From Octopus sinensis (Eukaryota), in assembly GCF_006345805.1 (NCBI RefSeq), contig NW_021823769.1:1-21279 (forward strand): 21,279 nucleotides of DNA, given 5' to 3'. Shown here one piece after another: positions 1,797 through 17,460 of this stretch; positions within the stretch are counted from its first letter, which is position 1, and every line of letters begins with the position of its first letter. The notes beneath the pieces were generated by a model. It had not been told where the DNA came from. It ran no database searches and was given only the letters and a program-made list of their open reading frames with translations. Position numbers and translations under genes: made by a program.

Positions 1797-2931
1797 GAAA
1801 ACTACTATAAAATAACCACCTGGAAAACTACTATAAAATAACCACCATAGGACTGCAAAAATATCTACTTCAGAAGGAAGGAAAACTGATCCAGATAGCG
1901 GCAAAACACGAGCAAAACAAAAAACTGTTCTCAGTATTTAAGGAAGCTGACAAATACAAACAAGAAATCATACCACCTAATAAACATGAAGAAGAAGAAG
2001 AAGAAGATGAAGAACACAACAAAAGCTATAAAACAAATGAAATCCAAACTGAAAATAGAACAGCAACGAACCATGATAAACGATGGCAAGAAAAGCCCCT
2101 TCATGGTAAATACTGGACTAAACTAAACGCAAAAGAAATAGACAAAGAAAAATCCCAGCAATGGTTGAGAAGCTCAGGACTCAAAGCAGAAACAGAGGAT
2201 TTTTATTGCAGCACAAGACCAAAGCCTCCCCACCAGAATTACCAAAAACATGTAATGAAAAGAAATATTACAAGTAACTGCAGAATATGTGGAGATGGAC
2301 AAGAAACAATAATCATATTATCTCTAGCTGCCCAGTCTTGGCTAAGAAGGAATATATTCACAGACATGACAGAGTTGGAACCTACATACATTGGAAGCTA
2401 TGCCAACATTATGGAATAACAACAAAAAAAGATGGTATAAGGCACACACCAGAAAAGGTCACAGAAAACGAGAAAGCAACCATACTCTGGGATATGCCGA
2501 TACACACAGATAGAGAAATTAGGCCAACAGACCAGATATAGTTGTCAGAGATCATGAAGAAAAAAAATGCTTTCTAATTGATGTATCAATACCGGCTGAT
2601 GACAACGTGTCTCTAAAAGAAATGGAGAAACTCAAATACAAAGACCTGGAATAGAGGTAACTAGAATGTGGAATCTGAAAACAGAACAATTCCTATCATA
2701 GTAGGTGCGTTAGGCATGATAAAAAATATTCAGACAAATACATAACAAAAACACCAGGACTTACAAACACATATACATACAGAAAATTGCACTACTAGGC
2801 ACTGCACACATCCTACGCAACACTTTCCATACAATAACCATCAGAGCATCACAACAAATCACAGCACATACCCAAGGCACACAGAGCTGTACTCGGTAGT
2901 GAAGTGAAAGCACGCTATAAAAATAAAACTA

Positions 2932-6330: not shown

Positions 6331-6575
6331 TTAATAAATAATAACAATAATAATAATGCCATCAGGCATTAAAGGCAAACAAGCAAATTCATGAATATGT
6401 AATTAATTATTAATTATAATTCAGGGTAGACGAATTACCAGCATTGCTAGAAATAAGAGTCGAAAAATACTCAGATAAGTCACCATTTCGCTGAAAATTC
6501 AACAGGCTGACGAAAATCGAGGAACGAGTAAAATCTGACGTACCAATGCGGCTGAAAGCCACAAATGAGGATCAC

Positions 6576-6640
6576 AGACATATCTATATCACGTGATTTC
6601 GAACTTAGAGATATTTCGCTTAATTCTCATCAGCAGGTCT
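6576..6640 (-). ncRNA. Candidate type I hammerhead ribozyme
   Basis: Minus strand: AGAC CUG | CUGAUGA | GAAUUAAGCGA-AAUA-UCUCUAAGUUC | GAAA | UCA-CG-UGA | UA^ | UAG AUAU GUCU. Core is intact. Stem II has 9 of 11 positions paired with a G10.1-C11.1 closure. Stem I is 3 bp, a 4-nt bulge, then 4 bp. Confidence 0.55.
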
Positions 6641-6683
6641 CGCTGTTGCCATAGGTTAAATTTATACTCGCTTCAGAGATACA

Positions 6684-6684
<1 letters not shown>

Positions 6685-6725
<41 letters not shown>

Positions 6726-6732
6726 TATATAT

Positions 6733-6782
<50 letters not shown>

Positions 6783-6786
6783 TATA

Positions 6787-6819
<33 letters not shown>

Positions 6820-6845
6820 CTATATATATATATACATATATATAT
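6685..6845. repeat. (TA)n microsatellite
   Basis: Direct reading. Confidence 0.95.
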
Positions 6846-7052
6846 ACGGAAAGTTTACGAAAAAAGCAAAAGACGAAGACAGGTGGTGTACAAAACAAAC
6901 AGATGTATTAGTATAACGCTCAGGAATAGAAAAAGTCTTTTACGTTTCGAGCCTACGCTCTTCTACAGAAAGGGGCACAGAAAAAACAAGGAGAGAAAAA
7001 AATGTGTGTAGTGGCTAACGATCTATCATGGCGACTAGGGCCGGACAGATGC
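6846..7052 (-). mobile_element. Putative Penelope-like-element (PLE) terminal fragment with a minimal HHR-like motif, inside (TA)n
   Basis: Minus strand CUUU CUGUAGA A GAGC-GUAG-GCUC GAAA C GUA^ AAAG (6972-6937) matches the CUGANGA-A-stem-GAAACGUH pattern seen at PLE termini. No PLE ORF is present in the window. Confidence 0.45.
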
Positions 7053-9512: not shown

Positions 9513-9548
<36 letters not shown>

Positions 9549-9617
9549 ATGAACAATAAGGGTGGCTTCTTAGTAATTTTACAACCAAAAGACTAAAATA
9601 CATACGTCACTAAAGCA

Positions 9618-9816
9618 ACTGAGGGCACTATTCGGCAGCAGTATTGCTAGAAATAAGAGTGAAAACGACTCGTAGCTACAACAACGCACCACTGACGAGC
9701 GTTAATGTAAACGTGAAATCATTGGTGATCTGGCTCTGCTCGGTGCTTGTCAGTAAATCATATTGTGGCTATGACTGTTATTTCCAGCAATACTGGTGCT
9801 GAATACTGCCCTCAGT
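9618..9816. mobile_element. 199-bp element with 39-bp TIRs enclosing a hammerhead ribozyme
   Basis: 9618-9656 versus the reverse complement of 9778-9816 match at 35/39. No confident target-site duplication (TSD). Confidence 0.8.
9682..9749 (+). ncRNA. Type I hammerhead ribozyme, canonical core, AUC cleavage site
   Basis: CCA | CUGACGA (9692-9698) | GCGUU-AAUGUA-AACGU | GAAA (9715-9718) | UCA-UUGG-UGA | UC^ (9729-9730) | UGG. Distal stem I is CAA-C-GCA / UGC-UUG, beyond a 10-nt bulge. Confidence 0.8.
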
Positions 9817-9821
9817 CACTA

Positions 9822-10033
9822 TATTCTTTTATTTGTTTCAGTTACTTGACTGCGGCCATGCTGGAGCACTGCCTTTAGTTGAGCAATTCGAGCAAATCGA
9901 CCTCAGGACTTATTCTTTGTAAGCCTAGTACTTATTCTATCGTTCTCTTTTGCCGAACCGCTAGTTTACGGGGACGTAAACACACCAGCATCCGTTGTCA
10001 AGCGATGTTAGTGGTGGTGGGGGACAAACACAG
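9822..10033 (-). mobile_element. SINE family 1, 3' half
   Basis: Homologous to 836-1080, 4020-4235 and 8936-9082. It stops at GGGACAAACACAG, directly abutting LINE sequence. Confidence 0.85.
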
Positions 10034-11085
10034 GGGGTATCCTGTGCTGACAACAAATGAATACAAAAATCACCATGATAGGTTAGGACAGTATTTACAT
10101 TGGAAAATATGTAAACACTACAAAATCAGCTCTCCTGCTTACTGGTATGAATATCATCCTGAGCCAGTCGTTGAAGGTAAAAGCGTCACTATCCTCTGGG
10201 ATTTTCCACACGGCACCGACAGAACGATCTAGGCTAATCGACCAGACACAATTACCAAAGAAAGGAAAATACTTGTAGACTAATAGAACTATTCCCACTG
10301 ATAAAAATACATCTGTAAAGGAATTTGACAAATTAAGGAATCATAAGGACCTGTAAATTGAAATACAAAAGATGTGGCATCTTAAAGCGAAAACTGTTCC
10401 TGTTATTGTAAGTGCCCTAGGTATGATAAAAAAAAAGGAATGTCAGATTATAACATCTCTTGTCCTTCACTTGCCCTGGGAAGCTGAGTATGTCTCGGGA
10501 AGTGATTGTAACAAACAAGCAGATTAAATGCCCTGATGCAGTACCGGTCACTAGCTCTCATGTCTTCTGATCTAAACTGACTGGAAGCGTTATCATGCAC
10601 ATTGTTTTGTCTTGGTATAAAAGATGGGCTACAGCAAATATTCTGCTCAATACCACAGATTTGCTTGTCAGTTGTTTGGCCTTAACTAGTTGAGCATGTC
10701 CCTTTTTGGCTGATATTATGTGCATTTCTGATCACGAGCAGAATTAGTGGTGGAGTATCATAGCTATGTGTTGAGAGGAATTATTTGGGGTTTGGATAAT
10801 TCACCACTGGAAACAAGGGTGTTTCGTTCAACATCCTTAAATAACACTTATTCAGGGACCTTTTGAGCAGGATGGGCTACTCGACTTGAAGAAAATTCTA
10901 ACTGAGCCCCACCTGCAAAGACATGCGCTGTTTATCTTGATATGAGATCACCACATCGCGCACATATGGTTGTGATGCATGTGCCTGGTGTACCTTTAAC
11001 AGACGGGTAGAAGTGATGGGTATATTTGGCTTCGTAAATTTTATCCCAGTGTTACTTTGATTGCCTGCATTGCTGCCTCACTCTG
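10034..11085 (+). mobile_element. R4/Dong-like LINE fragment, family D2, with probable long 3' UTR
   Basis: PVLTTNEYKNHHDRLGQYLHWKICKHY..WYEYHPEPVVEG..TILWDFP..TDRTI*ANRPD..EFDKL..KMWHLKAKTVPVIVSALGMIKK. About 630 bp of non-coding sequence follows and ends in TAATAAT; calling it the UTR is inference. Confidence 0.75.
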
Positions 11086-11092
11086 TAATAAT

Positions 11093-12126
11093 AGAAAGTT
11101 CCTAACGGTGCATGGAGCTCATCAACCATGTGTAGACACTAATCACCTATACATTGAGAGAGCAAATGGAGGAAGGGGACTGAAACGTTGCTAGTGACAG
11201 TTAGGAACGAGGGAGTATTGAGAGCAGAAAAAAAGGAAAACAAAAGCAGAAATACAAGAAGGACATGAAGAAGAATTGCGCGAGAAGGAACTACACAATT
11301 AATTCATGTAGCCACAACAGAAGTTGCGGGATAAAATAGGTGGGATTGACTGAAGAAAGGAACTCTAAAAAAAGAGACCGAGGGCACTATACTGACAGTG
11401 CAAGACCACGCTTTGGCCATGAACTGGAGGGTCAACCTTAGGAATGAGCAAGTGTCCCCGCTGTGCCGCATCTGCAATGGAGTGGAGGAAACCATTGGCC
11501 ATATCACGAAAGAACGCCTTAGGCTTGCCTAAAATCACAAGTTGTGGCGGCACGACCAGGTAACGAAAGTGCTACATTGGAAACTGTGCAATAAGTGAGG
11601 GTTAGAGGGAGGCAAGATATGGTATGAGCACAAATCGCAGAGAGTAACGGAGTCTGGGACTAGCAAAATCCTCTTGATTTCCCAATCCAAACAGATCAGG
11701 TGCTGGAGTATAACAGACCGGACCTCGTGGTGGTGAACAAGGTGCACCACATATGCTACATAGTTGATGTTTCATGTCCATTTGACCCACGAATAGTCAA
11801 GAAGGAAGGCAAAAAGATAGATAGATACAACCCCCTTAAGTACGAAATAGCCCAGCTATGGAAAGTGAAGAAGATGAAGATGGTGCCAATTATTGTTGAG
11901 TCCTTGGGAACAGAATCAGAAGGCATCAAAGGGAATATAAAGGAAATTGAAATAGAGTGCCCCATAGAACTGTTACAAAAGGCTTGCCTCCTTTGCACGG
12001 CCAGAATAATCAGGAAAGTATTAGATAGCCGAAAAGAACGAATAGCATGGTGCCGTATGCTGCAGGTAGTAAACCAGCTATGCATGCAAGACTCTAGGAA
12101 TTCCAACAAAACCTGTGATAAAGGAA
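11093..12126 (+). mobile_element. R4/Dong-like LINE fragment, family D3, decayed
   Basis: RKFLTVHGAHQP..LYIERANGGRGL (end of reverse transcriptase), WDxLKKGTLKKETEG, CRICNGVEETIGHI, RHDQVTKVLHWKLC, YNRPDLVVV..IVDVSCPFD..YNPLKYEI..LLQKACLLCTARIIRKVL (ORF 11700..12131). Ends in AATAATAATA. Confidence 0.85.
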
Positions 12127-12136
12127 AATAATAATA

Positions 12137-16906: not shown

Positions 16907-17460
16907 ATTTGTGATGAAGCAATGGCACACATTTTTGTAGAAAGCTCTAAGTTGGTCCAGGGTGGAGATTTAAGAAAAGGCGGCACGATCAAGTTGTAAA
17001 AATTTTGCATTGGAGACTGTCAGAAATTGAGATTTGAAATTTGAAGCACTTGGTATGAACATCAAATATAATGAGTGCTTGGGGGAGTTGGAAAAATGCA
17101 AGATTTTTTAAGGATTTTCCCAATACAAGTGGATAAGAATTTAGAACATAACAGGCCAGATATTACGTGGAAAATCGAATTCGCTTGCTGATTGATCCAT
17201 CATGCCCATTTCAGCATTTCAGGACAGTGAACAATGCTGAAAAGTCGAAAAAATACAACCCCTTAAAATTTGAGATTGCGTGGATTTGGAACATGGGATC
17301 TGTAAAGATTGTACCTCTGATAATTGGCGCATTAGGGGCTGGGAGTGTTAACATAGAGAAAGGCTTAAAGGAGATTCGAATGGAATGTCCTGTAAAGCTT
17401 CTACAGAAGCTTTGCCTCTTGAAGACATGGAATATTATCTGAAGTGTTTTGAGGACTTGA
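16907..17460 (+). mobile_element. Highly decayed R4/Dong-like LINE fragment related to D3
   Basis: RHDQVVKILHWRL..WYEH..HNRPDIT..LLIDPSCPF..KYNPLKFEIAWIWNM..VPLIIGALG..ECPVKLLQKLCLL (ORF 17167..17442). Confidence 0.8.

What the first reader, a model, noticed from the sequence alone, without database searches (positions are those of the whole stretch)
9618..9816. Canonical hammerhead ribozyme enclosed by 39-bp terminal inverted repeats
Seen: all core nucleotides (CUGACGA, GAAA, AUC^ at 9730) with stems I-III. The HHR sits on a 10-bp helix (9672-9681/9763-9772), beside a GAGT/ACTC side hairpin, and is closed by 35/39 TIRs, giving a 199-nt rod with the ribozyme at its tip. The one non-canonical pair, G10.1-U11.1, fits CpG decay of C-GAAA. 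Established: HHRs occur in PLEs and in retrozymes (direct or tandem repeats); I know of no TIR-bounded MITE-like element carrying one. Inference: a non-autonomous element that looks like a MITE but encodes a self-cleaving RNA. It could be a retrozyme or PLE derivative with inverted ends, or an endogenised rod-like RNA.
Basis: partly seen in the sequence, partly recalled or inferred. Interest (0 to 1): 0.88.

Follow-up and report, generated by a model that had tools for sequence, protein, structure and literature searches.

The report
Decayed hammerhead retroelement, head-to-head copy
The hammerhead ribozyme motif and the inverted repeats are real, but together they are a worn-out, head-to-head pair of truncated copies of an ordinary ribozyme-carrying retroelement repeat, probably in an octopus genome, and not a new kind of MITE-like element.

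Summary
The sequence features exist. A hammerhead (HHR) core lies at 9692-9730, and chance gives such a motif in 3 of 1000 shuffled windows. It is flanked by inverted arms that match at 38 of 43 positions.

The feature belongs to a dispersed repeat of a 2.72-Gb eukaryotic genome, probably Octopus sinensis. Pattern searches find at least 194 HHR-bearing copies and at least 2163 copies of the 3' "arm".

The family consensus is a canonical type I HHR. It has a 14-bp stem I and a G10.1-C11.1 pair, and it sits in a unit of about 310 bp that also occurs as partial tandems.

The window copy matches that consensus only from CCACUGACGA (9689) onwards. Everything upstream (9555-9690) is a reverse-complement copy of the family's own 3' arm.

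The "TIRs" are therefore two 5'-truncated copies joined head to head. The junction is unique in the genome. The arms are unequal in length and there is no target-site duplication (TSD).

About a third of the sampled arms show the same inverted arrangement, each with a different centre, and most centres lack the HHR. The outer ends abut microsatellites.

This architecture has been published for Penelope-like element (PLE) insertions, and animal non-LTR retrozymes have been proposed to be PLE derivatives.

The window ribozyme keeps only 3 bp of stem I, has a G·U pair at 10.1/11.1, and its catalytic fold is 14.5 kcal/mol less stable than the rod. It is probably inactive.

Verdict: a new member of a known kind, of low interest.

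The parts
9555..9690 (-). Inverted, 5'-truncated copy of the family's 3' module (the 'arm'). Its own sense runs on the minus strand. Its 3' end (..CCACCCUUAUU) points left, and its truncated 5' end is at the junction 9689/9690.
   Evidence: 89.7% identical (122/136, no gaps) to the arm consensus of 26 other copies.
9689..9824 (+). Sense copy of the family, 5'-truncated inside stem I of the HHR. It runs through the HHR and the arm to the internal UAUAU. It carries three deletions relative to the consensus (18, 10 and 10 nt), and one of them removes the GGGAG..CUCCC hairpin.
   Evidence: 93.2% identity to the consensus over aligned positions. The alignment to 29 HHR copies is homologous only from CCACTGACGAG onwards.
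9689..9733 (+). Hammerhead remnant. Stem I is 3 bp (9689-9691/9731-9733), CUGACGA is at 9692-9698, stem II at 9699-9714 (G10.1·U11.1), GAAA at 9715-9718, stem III at 9718-9729 and C17 at 9730. The predicted cut is between 9730 and 9731.
   Evidence: The family model R1 scores it 62.1 bits with 6/14 stem I pairs non-canonical.
9689..9690 (.). Head-to-head junction. The dinucleotide CC is shared by the inner end of the arm (..ACGCACC) and the start of the HHR copy (CCACUGA..), giving a 2-nt microhomology.
   Evidence: The 25-nt junction sequence is unique in the genome at up to 3 mismatches.
9618..9660 (.). Left half of the best-matching part of the inverted repeat. It pairs with 9774-9816.
   Evidence: 38/43 complementary. 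All 5 differences are private to one arm, and the other arm keeps the family consensus base.
9774..9816 (.). Right half of the best-matching part of the inverted repeat.
9513..9550 (.). (AT)n(GT)n microsatellite that abuts the outer (3') end of the inverted copy. Probably the insertion target.
   Evidence: At least 16 of 26 other arms also end at a microsatellite.
9825..10020 (-). Unrelated abundant SINE-like repeat. Its 3' tail faces the 3' end of the sense copy. The right boundary is approximate.
   Evidence: The same repeat tail (..GCAGTCAAATGACTGAAACAAGTAAAAGA) sits next to the arm ends in L003, L010 and L016. It is also seen beside L017.

Best explanation
The feature is one decayed insertion of a dispersed, non-coding retroelement family that carries a hammerhead.

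The family unit is about 310 nt. It reads spacer, then a canonical type I HHR with a long stem I, then a small hairpin, then a 3' 'arm' of about 135 nt ending ..CCACCCUUAUUAUUUAUA. The genome is 2.72 Gb and is probably Octopus sinensis. That identification rests on the assembly size and on a scaffold N50 that I recall from memory, not on sequence.

The window locus consists of two 5'-truncated copies joined head to head. An inverted copy holds only the 3' arm (9555-9690). A sense copy begins inside stem I of the HHR (9689-9824). Their shared 3' arms look like TIRs, and the leftover HHR sits between them.

This matches the insertion architecture described for Penelope-like elements (PLEs) and their non-autonomous derivatives: partial tandems, an inverted 5'-truncated copy next to the 5' end, and insertion at microsatellites.

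Shown: homology to the family; the consensus HHR; the unique junction; recurrence of head-to-head pairs with variable centres; ends at microsatellites; and an excess of 3' arms over HHRs.

Inferred: integration was by target-primed reverse transcription, with both target ends priming (or a template switch), using a PLE enzyme supplied in trans. Family members with two HHRs can release a monomer of about 310 nt by self-cleavage, as retrozymes do. The window ribozyme is now inactive.
For: - Family size. At least 99 arm hits and at least 41 HHR hits by BLAST. 194 matches to a 25-nt HHR pattern against 0 for the control, and 2163 matches to a 25-nt arm pattern against 1 for the control. The 11:1 excess of arms fits 5' truncation.
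- Consensus HHR. The consensus of 29 other copies is AAGGCGCCGGUGAGAGCCA-CUGACGA-GCGUU-AAUGUA-AACGC-GAAA-UCACUGGUGAUC^UGGCUAUGCCCGGUGCUU. 84.7% of pair cells are paired, against 34-47% when partners are slid. One stem II pair is G-C in 19 copies and A-U in 11, and is never broken.
- Window copy. It is homologous only from 9689 onwards. The left part is 89.7% identical to the arm consensus in reverse orientation.
- Junction. It is unique in the genome.
- Inverted arrangement elsewhere. It recurs with different centres in L004, L006, L008, L016, L019, L022, L023, L024, L028, and in L017, L051, L055, L053 and L062.
- Orientation of inverted HHR pairs. Seven are head to head and one is tail to tail.
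- A fuller example. L055 reads (CA)n | inverted arm | 2.1 tandem units of period 308 | (TA)n(TG)n. L031 holds 1.45 units of period 314.
- Ends. At least 16 of 26 outer ends abut microsatellites.
- PLEs in this genome. They are abundant: at least 147 GIY-YIG hits were scored out of 4846 candidates, many in open frames of 600-880 aa.
- Literature. PLE insertions form partial tandems plus an adjacent inverted 5'-truncated copy, carry HHRs in their pLTRs and prefer microsatellites (PMC8557442). Canonical type I HHRs in low-GC tandem repeats of about 300 bp are non-LTR retrozymes (PMC7229834). Retrozymes have been proposed to be non-autonomous PLE derivatives (bioRxiv 10.64898/2026.07.22.740005).
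Against: - No autonomous PLE sharing this HHR or arm was found. Twelve sampled GIY-YIG loci (±1.5 kb) hold neither, so the PLE link rests on architecture and literature alone.
- Rfam models do not call the family a hammerhead at gathering score. The best result is HH9 at 19.1 bits, E = 0.021, on copy L046.
- Most copies are monomers or fragments, not tandems.
- One decayed monomer is not unusually structured (z = -0.71), so the retrozyme trait 'highly self-paired circRNA' is not shown.
- Only 5 of 30 sampled copies keep an intact core. The family may be extinct.
- Neither expression nor cleavage was tested.
Confidence: 0.78

Rival explanations
1. The family is the same, but the inverted structure arose at the DNA level after or apart from retrotransposition. 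One route is two independent insertions into the same microsatellite in opposite orientations. Another is a fold-back rearrangement, or a central deletion of a longer head-to-head dimer.
For: The left arm is closer to other genomic copies (up to 90%) and to the consensus (89.7%) than to its partner (88.4%), and no derived change is shared between the arms. Independent origin therefore cannot be excluded. The sense copy carries three internal deletions. In L055 the left flank (CA)n is the reverse complement of the right flank (TG)n, which hints at palindromes reaching beyond the element.
Against: Head-to-head arrangement is systematic: 9 of 26 arms, and 7 head-to-head HHR pairs against 1 tail-to-tail. 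Random nested insertions would give both orientations equally. The divergence between the arms roughly equals the sum of each arm's divergence from the consensus. That is what one event followed by independent decay would give.
Confidence: 0.15
2. It is a genuine TIR-bounded, MITE-like non-autonomous DNA element that carries a functional hammerhead at the tip of its hairpin.
For: The arms match at 38/43, the rod is strong (z = -10.6), and arm(+)...arm(-) hairpins are common in the family.
Against: The junction is unique in 2.7 Gb. There is no TSD. The arms are unequal, and the outermost bases are not part of the repeat. Centres differ between copies and mostly lack the HHR. 27 of 29 HHR copies have no inverted arm upstream. 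The HHR here has lost the 5' strand of stem I.
Confidence: 0.03
3. It is an endogenised viroid-like or HDV-like rod-shaped RNA replicon, or the HHR motif is a chance occurrence inside a palindrome.
For: The fold is rod-like. No Rfam hit supports the ribozyme.
Against: Hundreds to thousands of decayed genomic copies with 5' truncation and microsatellite ends behave as a retroelement. No exact match to a 29-nt HHR pattern was found in the viral contig collection. There is no ribozyme on the opposite strand. Chance is excluded by homology to a family whose consensus is a better HHR than this copy, and by 3/1000 shuffles.
Confidence: 0.02

Closest known systems
Metazoan non-LTR retrozymes (Cervera & de la Peña 2020, PMC7229834)
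   Same: The family has a canonical type I HHR with long helices I-III. The unit is non-coding, about 310 bp long and of low GC (this copy 41%). Tandem dimers and partial multimers occur with periods of 308-334. There are many decayed genomic copies, and PLEs are abundant in the same genome.
   Different: Most copies seen here are monomers, 3' fragments or head-to-head pairs, not long tandem arrays. circRNA expression is untested. Cephalopods are not mentioned in the main text of that paper. The window copy holds 0.45 of a unit and a single crippled HHR, so it cannot release a circle.
Penelope-like element insertions and their pseudo-LTRs (Craig et al. 2021, PMC8557442)
   Same: Partial tandems, an adjacent inverted 5'-truncated copy that creates flanking inverted repeats, frequent 5' truncation, a preference for microsatellites, and an HHR in the repeated 3' region.
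   Different: No RT/GIY-YIG ORF is attached, and no autonomous partner was identified. PLE HHRs are usually minimal variants with a very short helix III, whereas this family's HHR is a full canonical type I.
Twin-priming 5' inversions of LINE-1 and SINE insertions (established knowledge, not tested here)
   Same: An inverted 5' segment is joined to a 3' segment in direct orientation, with microhomology at the junction (2 nt, CC, here).
   Different: In twin priming the inverted part normally comes from the region upstream of the direct part. Here both halves hold the same 3' arm. This needs a multimeric or second template, or priming of both cDNAs near the 3' end.
MITEs
   Same: Short, non-coding, with inverted repeats and a strong hairpin fold.
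   Different: No TSD, no conserved termini, unequal arms and a unique internal junction. The rest of the family behaves as a retroelement.

Membership tests
Hammerhead ribozyme, type I | Conserved core: C3 U4 G5 A6 N7 G8 A9, G12 A13 A14, the A15.1-U16.1 pair, H17 | tested here: met
   The window has CUGACGA at 9692-9698, GAAA at 9715-9718, U9729 and C9730. Five of 30 sampled copies keep every core position, including the G10.1-C11.1 pair tested in the next row.
Hammerhead ribozyme, type I | G10.1-C11.1 pair closing helix II | tested here: not met
   The window has G9699·U9714. The family consensus has G-C, and T at 11.1 occurs in 12 of 30 copies, which fits CpG decay of AACGCGAAA.
Hammerhead ribozyme, type I | Three helices, with helix I long enough to carry the loop 1/loop 2 contact | tested here: not met
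   Helices II (5 bp) and III (4 bp) are intact. Helix I is 3 bp in the window against 14 bp in the consensus, and 6 of 14 pairs are non-canonical in the R1 alignment. At family level the feature is met.
Hammerhead ribozyme, type I | Reaches the Rfam gathering score of a hammerhead model (RF00163, RF00008, RF02275-7) | tested here: not met
   The window gives no hit at E<=10. Twenty family loci give none at gathering score. The best result is RF02275 at 19.1 bits, against the 52 needed, on L046.
Hammerhead ribozyme, type I | Self-cleavage 3' of H17 | not testable with these tools
   This needs in vitro transcription. The fold energetics argue against it here: -77.5 kcal/mol for the catalytic fold against -92.0 kcal/mol for the rod.
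Metazoan non-LTR retrozyme | Canonical type I HHR inside short (150-450 bp) head-to-tail repeats, from dimers upward | tested here: inconclusive
   At family level, tandem HHRs occur 308 nt apart (L055) and 334 nt apart (L020), and L031 holds 1.45 units. Most sampled loci, however, have a single HHR. The window copy is not tandem.
Metazoan non-LTR retrozyme | Non-coding and of low GC (<45%) | tested here: met
   No ORF of 90 aa or more lies in 9555-9824. GC is 41%.
Metazoan non-LTR retrozyme | Expressed as highly self-paired circRNAs of 170-400 nt | not testable with these tools
   No RNA data were available. One decayed monomer folds no better than its shuffles (z = -0.71).
PLE-type insertion / non-autonomous PLE derivative | Partial tandem (pLTR-like) copies with variable 5' truncation | tested here: met
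   L031, L051 and L055. The arm:HHR ratio is 2163:194.
PLE-type insertion / non-autonomous PLE derivative | Inverted 5'-truncated copy directly adjacent to the 5' end | tested here: met
   Seen in the window and in 9 of 26 sampled arms, each with a different junction. Inverted HHR pairs are 7 head to head and 1 tail to tail.
PLE-type insertion / non-autonomous PLE derivative | Insertion at microsatellites | tested here: met
   At least 16 of 26 outer ends abut (TA)n, (CA)n or (TG)n. In the window the partner is (AT)n(GT)n at 9513-9550.
PLE-type insertion / non-autonomous PLE derivative | Sequence similarity to the 3' end or pLTR of an autonomous RT + GIY-YIG element | tested here: inconclusive
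   PLEs are abundant, but 12 sampled loci hold neither the HHR nor the arm. Only 12 of at least 4846 candidates were looked at.
MITE | Target-site duplication flanking the element | tested here: not met
   The flanks are ..GTGTATGAAC and TCTTTTATTTG.., with no shared k-mer of 4 or more at the ends.
MITE | Conserved terminal inverted repeats at the very ends, shared by many copies with the same internal sequence | tested here: not met
   The left arm extends 63 nt beyond the repeat, and the right arm lacks the terminal ~45 nt. The junction is unique. Centres vary between copies.

The most novel reading that the evidence does not exclude
The head-to-head 'arm, HHR, arm' configuration could be a working unit rather than debris. 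When transcribed it would fold into a long hairpin. The ribozyme at the tip would cut the loop open and leave a perfect-ended dsRNA, which could feed an siRNA or piRNA pathway against the family. That would be a ribozyme-assisted route to small RNA precursors. A weaker and more likely version is that the PLE-style insertion scars of this canonical-HHR family give independent structural evidence, in a mollusc, that non-LTR retrozymes are integrated by PLE enzymes.
Probability: 0.04. Interest if true: 0.75.

Novelty: new member of a known kind. Interest (0 to 1): 0.24.

Why it matters
The window copy is a dead fragment and matters little on its own.

The family behind it appears to be an undescribed cephalopod example of the type I hammerhead repeats known as non-LTR retrozymes. 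No paper in the searched library links hammerheads or retrozymes with octopus beyond a passing mention.

Its insertion scars are partial tandems, head-to-head truncated copies and microsatellite targets. These are the scars described for Penelope-like elements, so the family offers a simple structural test of the recent proposal that animal retrozymes are non-autonomous PLE derivatives.

It is also a practical warning. PLE-type insertions mimic TIR elements and will mislead MITE finders.

Tried and rejected
- **Rfam scans.** I scanned the window at gathering score and at E<=10, and 20 family loci at gathering score. No hammerhead was called. One good copy gave only a weak HH9 hit. I therefore relied on my own descriptor, the family alignment and a family covariance model.
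- **Search for an autonomous partner.** The genome has many GIY-YIG (PF01541) hits. Twelve such loci and seven RF00163 loci contain neither the family's HHR nor its arm. This is inconclusive because the sample is tiny. The coordinates of the listed GIY-YIG hits and HHR hits never fall within 5 kb of each other, by inspection.
- **Reading G000 loci in Python.** They are not provided as files. I used the alignment files instead.
- **Fold of a 308-nt monomer from L055.** It is not more stable than its shuffles (z = -0.71). This gives no support for a rod-like monomer from that decayed copy.
- **Viral contig scan for the HHR pattern.** No hits.
- **Snap-back self-priming at the CUGACGAG/CUUGUCAG helix as the exact origin of the junction.** I considered it. 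It predicts an extra 9 nt (CCGTCTTAT) that are absent, and it predicts arms of equal length, which is not what is seen. I kept it only as a variant of the mechanism.
- **Chance occurrence of the HHR.** Rejected.

Full report
**The observation**

- CUGACGA at 9692-9698.
- A 5-bp helix II at 9699-9703/9710-9714, closed by G·U, with loop AAUGUA.
- GAAA at 9715-9718.
- A 4-bp helix III at 9718-9721/9726-9729 with loop UUGG.
- C17 at 9730.

A descriptor scan of my own required CUGANGA, helix II of at least 4 bp, GAAA, an A-U-closed helix III of at least 4 bp, a non-G at position 17 and helix I of at least 3 bp. It finds this one site in the 21-kb window on either strand. Three of 1000 dinucleotide-preserving shuffles give any hit.

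The inverted arms are real (I1; 38/43). The 199-nt stretch folds into a rod of -92 kcal/mol, z = -10.6.

Three things do not hold:
- Helix I has only 3 bp (9689-9691/9731-9733).
- No Rfam hammerhead model matches, even at E<=10 on a 451-nt slice.
- In the minimum-energy rod the ribozyme is not formed, because CUGACGAGC pairs with GCUUGUCAG. Forcing the catalytic fold costs 14.5 kcal/mol (-77.5 against -92.0).

**It is a member of a repeat family**

The window is contig C240 of a 2,719,151,902-bp assembly with 13,516 contigs. Size and contig lengths fit the 2.72-Gb chromosome-level Octopus sinensis assembly cited in PMC12564688. My recollection that its N50 is 105.89 Mb matches the length of contig C10, 105,892,736 bp. 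I treat the species as probable, not proven.

BLAST of the region against its own genome gave at least 99 hits to the arms and at least 41 to the HHR part. Exhaustive pattern searches gave three counts:
- 38 exact matches to a 20-nt helix II/GAAA motif, against 0 for the control.
- 194 matches at up to 3 mismatches to a 25-nt GAAA/helix III/helix I pattern, against 0 for the control.
- 2163 matches at up to 3 mismatches to a 25-nt arm pattern, against 1 for the control.

**The family consensus is a better hammerhead than the window copy**

I aligned 29 other HHR copies in the correct orientation. The consensus reads ..AAGCUGACAAGG..GAGUUUAACCC-AAGGCGCCGG-UGAG-AGCCA-CUGACGA-GCGUU-AAUGUA-AACGC-GAAA-UCACUGGUGAUC^UGGCU-AUGC-CCGGUGCUU-AGGGAGCUUGCCUCCC-UUGUCAGUAAAUAAGACGG-UGCGUUAUUGUGGCUAUGAG...

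This is a type I hammerhead with G10.1-C11.1. Its helix I has 5 + 9 bp interrupted by a 4x4 internal loop.

On the alignment, 84.7% of pair cells are standard pairs, against 34-47% when the 3' partners are slid by 1-3 columns. One helix II pair is G-C in 19 copies and A-U in 11, and is never broken. The slid control flatters a structure derived from the consensus. The A-U state may also be one inherited subfamily change, so I take this only as consistent with a working ribozyme at the time of amplification.

The family is old. Only 5 of 30 copies keep every core position. The commonest lesion is C11.1 to T (12 of 30), and G12 to A occurs in 3.

Rfam does not call these copies either. A core-intact copy, L046, gets a local match to Hammerhead_HH9 at 19.1 bits, E = 0.021.

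A covariance model built from 20 copies (R1) scores well-kept copies at 80-101 bits. It scores the window copy at 62.1 bits, with helices II and III intact but 6 of 14 helix I pairs non-canonical.

**What the 'TIRs' are**

In the alignment the window is homologous to the family only from CCACUGACGAG (9689) onwards. In 27 of the other 29 copies the upstream sequence is the conserved 5' strand of helix I and its leader.

In the window, the upstream sequence 9555-9690 is the reverse complement of the family's own 3' region. It is 122/136 identical to the arm consensus, without gaps. The sense copy runs from 9689 to about 9824. It is 93.2% identical to the consensus and carries three deletions of 18, 10 and 10 nt. 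The first removes the GGGAG..CUCCC hairpin.

The locus is thus two 5'-truncated copies joined head to head, sharing the dinucleotide CC at the junction. The GAGU/ACUC side hairpin is the part of the left arm whose partner on the right has been deleted.

- The arms are unequal. The left one reaches the family's 3' terminus (..CCACCCUUAUU, at 9555). The right one stops at the family's internal UAUAU (9820-9824).
- No target-site duplication flanks the insertion.
- The 25-nt junction sequence occurs once in the genome at up to 3 mismatches.
- The five differences between the arms are all private to one arm. This fits one event followed by independent decay, but it does not exclude two events.

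**The same architecture recurs with other centres**

Of 26 other arms aligned with their surroundings, 9 are followed by an inverted partner: L004, L006, L008, L016, L019, L022, L023, L024 and L028. Every junction is different. Several centres sit at the small GGGAG hairpin or just downstream of it, and most contain no HHR.

Further cases are:
- L017, an arm(+)/HHR/arm(-) locus like the window but with a different junction that keeps the 5' strand of helix I.
- L051.
- L053 and L062.
- L055, which reads (CA)n | 85-nt inverted arm | 2.1 sense units with two HHRs 308 nt apart | (TA)n(TG)n.

With the family model, inverted HHR pairs within a locus are head to head in seven loci and tail to tail in one. 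Partial tandems exist (L031, 1.45 units of period 314; L020, two HHRs 334 nt apart).

The outer (3') ends abut microsatellites in at least 16 of 26 copies. In five of them (L009, L011, L019, L025, L029) the arm is cut at or near its internal TATATA. This is the form of the window's right end. In the window the left end abuts (AT)n(GT)n at 9513-9550.

**Comparison with the literature**

Craig et al. 2021 (PMC8557442) describe PLE insertions as highly 5'-truncated and organised in partial tandems that form pseudo-LTRs. [quoted passage not shown] HHRs typically lie in the pLTRs. They report the insertion bias for microsatellites specifically for the new N-terminal-EN PLE clade.

Cervera and de la Peña 2020 (PMC7229834) define metazoan non-LTR retrozymes as canonical type I HHRs in low-GC tandem repeats of about 300 bp that are expressed as circRNAs.

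A 2026 preprint (10.64898/2026.07.22.740005) argues from co-distribution and pLTR similarity that these retrozymes are non-autonomous PLE derivatives.

The family here fits all of these descriptions at the level of DNA anatomy, and the genome is rich in GIY-YIG elements with long open frames.

I could not find the autonomous partner. Twelve sampled PLE loci contain neither the HHR nor the arm. The genome-wide model search that would settle this was not available.

**Mechanism, with its status**

Shown: the locus is a head-to-head pair of truncated family copies at a microsatellite, and the family shows a systematic excess of 3' parts, partial tandems and head-to-head pairs.

Inferred:
- Integration was by target-primed reverse transcription in which both ends of the cut microsatellite primed cDNA on family RNA, or the enzyme switched templates.
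- The two cDNAs were joined at their truncated ends by microhomology.
- The enzyme was a PLE RT/endonuclease acting in trans.
- Full units with two HHRs can excise an RNA of about 310 nt.

The window ribozyme is very probably dead. It has lost the 5' strand of helix I and with it any loop 1/loop 2 contact, it has G·U at 10.1/11.1, and it competes with a much more stable rod.

**Verdict**

The finding is a new member of a known kind, and this particular copy is debris.

The modest value lies in two points. Cephalopods seem not to have been described as hosts of canonical-HHR retrozymes. The insertion scars of this family also offer a structural test of the retrozyme-PLE link.

Noticed in passing
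window 6420-6690, minus strand (R1 model hit 6652->6568): A second hammerhead-bearing element lies 3 kb away: ..GGCAACAGCGAGACCUG-CUGAUGA-GAAUU[16 nt]AGUUC-GAAA-UCACGUGAU-A^UAGAUAUGUCUGUGAUCC. A divergent arm-like stretch (GACTCTTATTTCTAGCAATGCTGG) follows it, and a long (TA)n (6687-6846) lies on its 5' side. R1 scores it 33.4 bits, E = 1.7e-6. It looks like a different subfamily with a palindromic helix III (UCACGUGA), as in the dimer-forming minimal HHRs.
   Followed up: partly
window 9825-~10020 (minus-strand sense); also the flanks of L003, L010, L016 and L017: An abundant SINE-like repeat (tail ..GCAGTCAAATGACTGAAACAAGTAAAAGA) sits tail to tail against the 3' end of the HHR family copy in the window and in 3 of 26 other copies. 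This suggests that the microsatellite tails of this SINE are a favoured target.
   Followed up: partly
L055 (G000:C8:68011237-68012536): The flanks of this complex insertion are (CA)n on the left and (TA)n(TG)n on the right. They are reverse complements of each other, so the palindrome may extend into the target. This is not explained by simple target-primed insertion.
   Followed up: no
L078 (G000:C16:25146363-25146839) and L075 (G000:C3:114408469): Other, unrelated RF00163 type I hammerheads exist in the genome. Two lie 431 nt apart in tandem in L078. One lies 500 nt upstream of a 5S-rRNA-like sequence in L075 (46 bits). These are probably further retrozyme or PLE families.
   Followed up: no
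window 9990-10232, 11664-12131, 17152-17442 and 2200-2419 (plus strand): Several open-frame fragments share C-terminal motifs (..RPDLVV..DV.CPFD......KY.PL..EI...W....V.P.I.G.LG), seemingly from one and the same retroelement family. The window is otherwise dominated by (AT)n, (TATC)n and other microsatellites. C240 is an unplaced 21-kb repeat-rich contig.
   Followed up: no
G000:C12242:20800-22400 (L050, L051, L056): A near-identical (99%) 426-nt inverted duplication of a family copy, plus a 477-nt direct duplication, lies on a small unplaced contig. It is either a very young complex insertion or an assembly artefact of a palindrome.
   Followed up: partly
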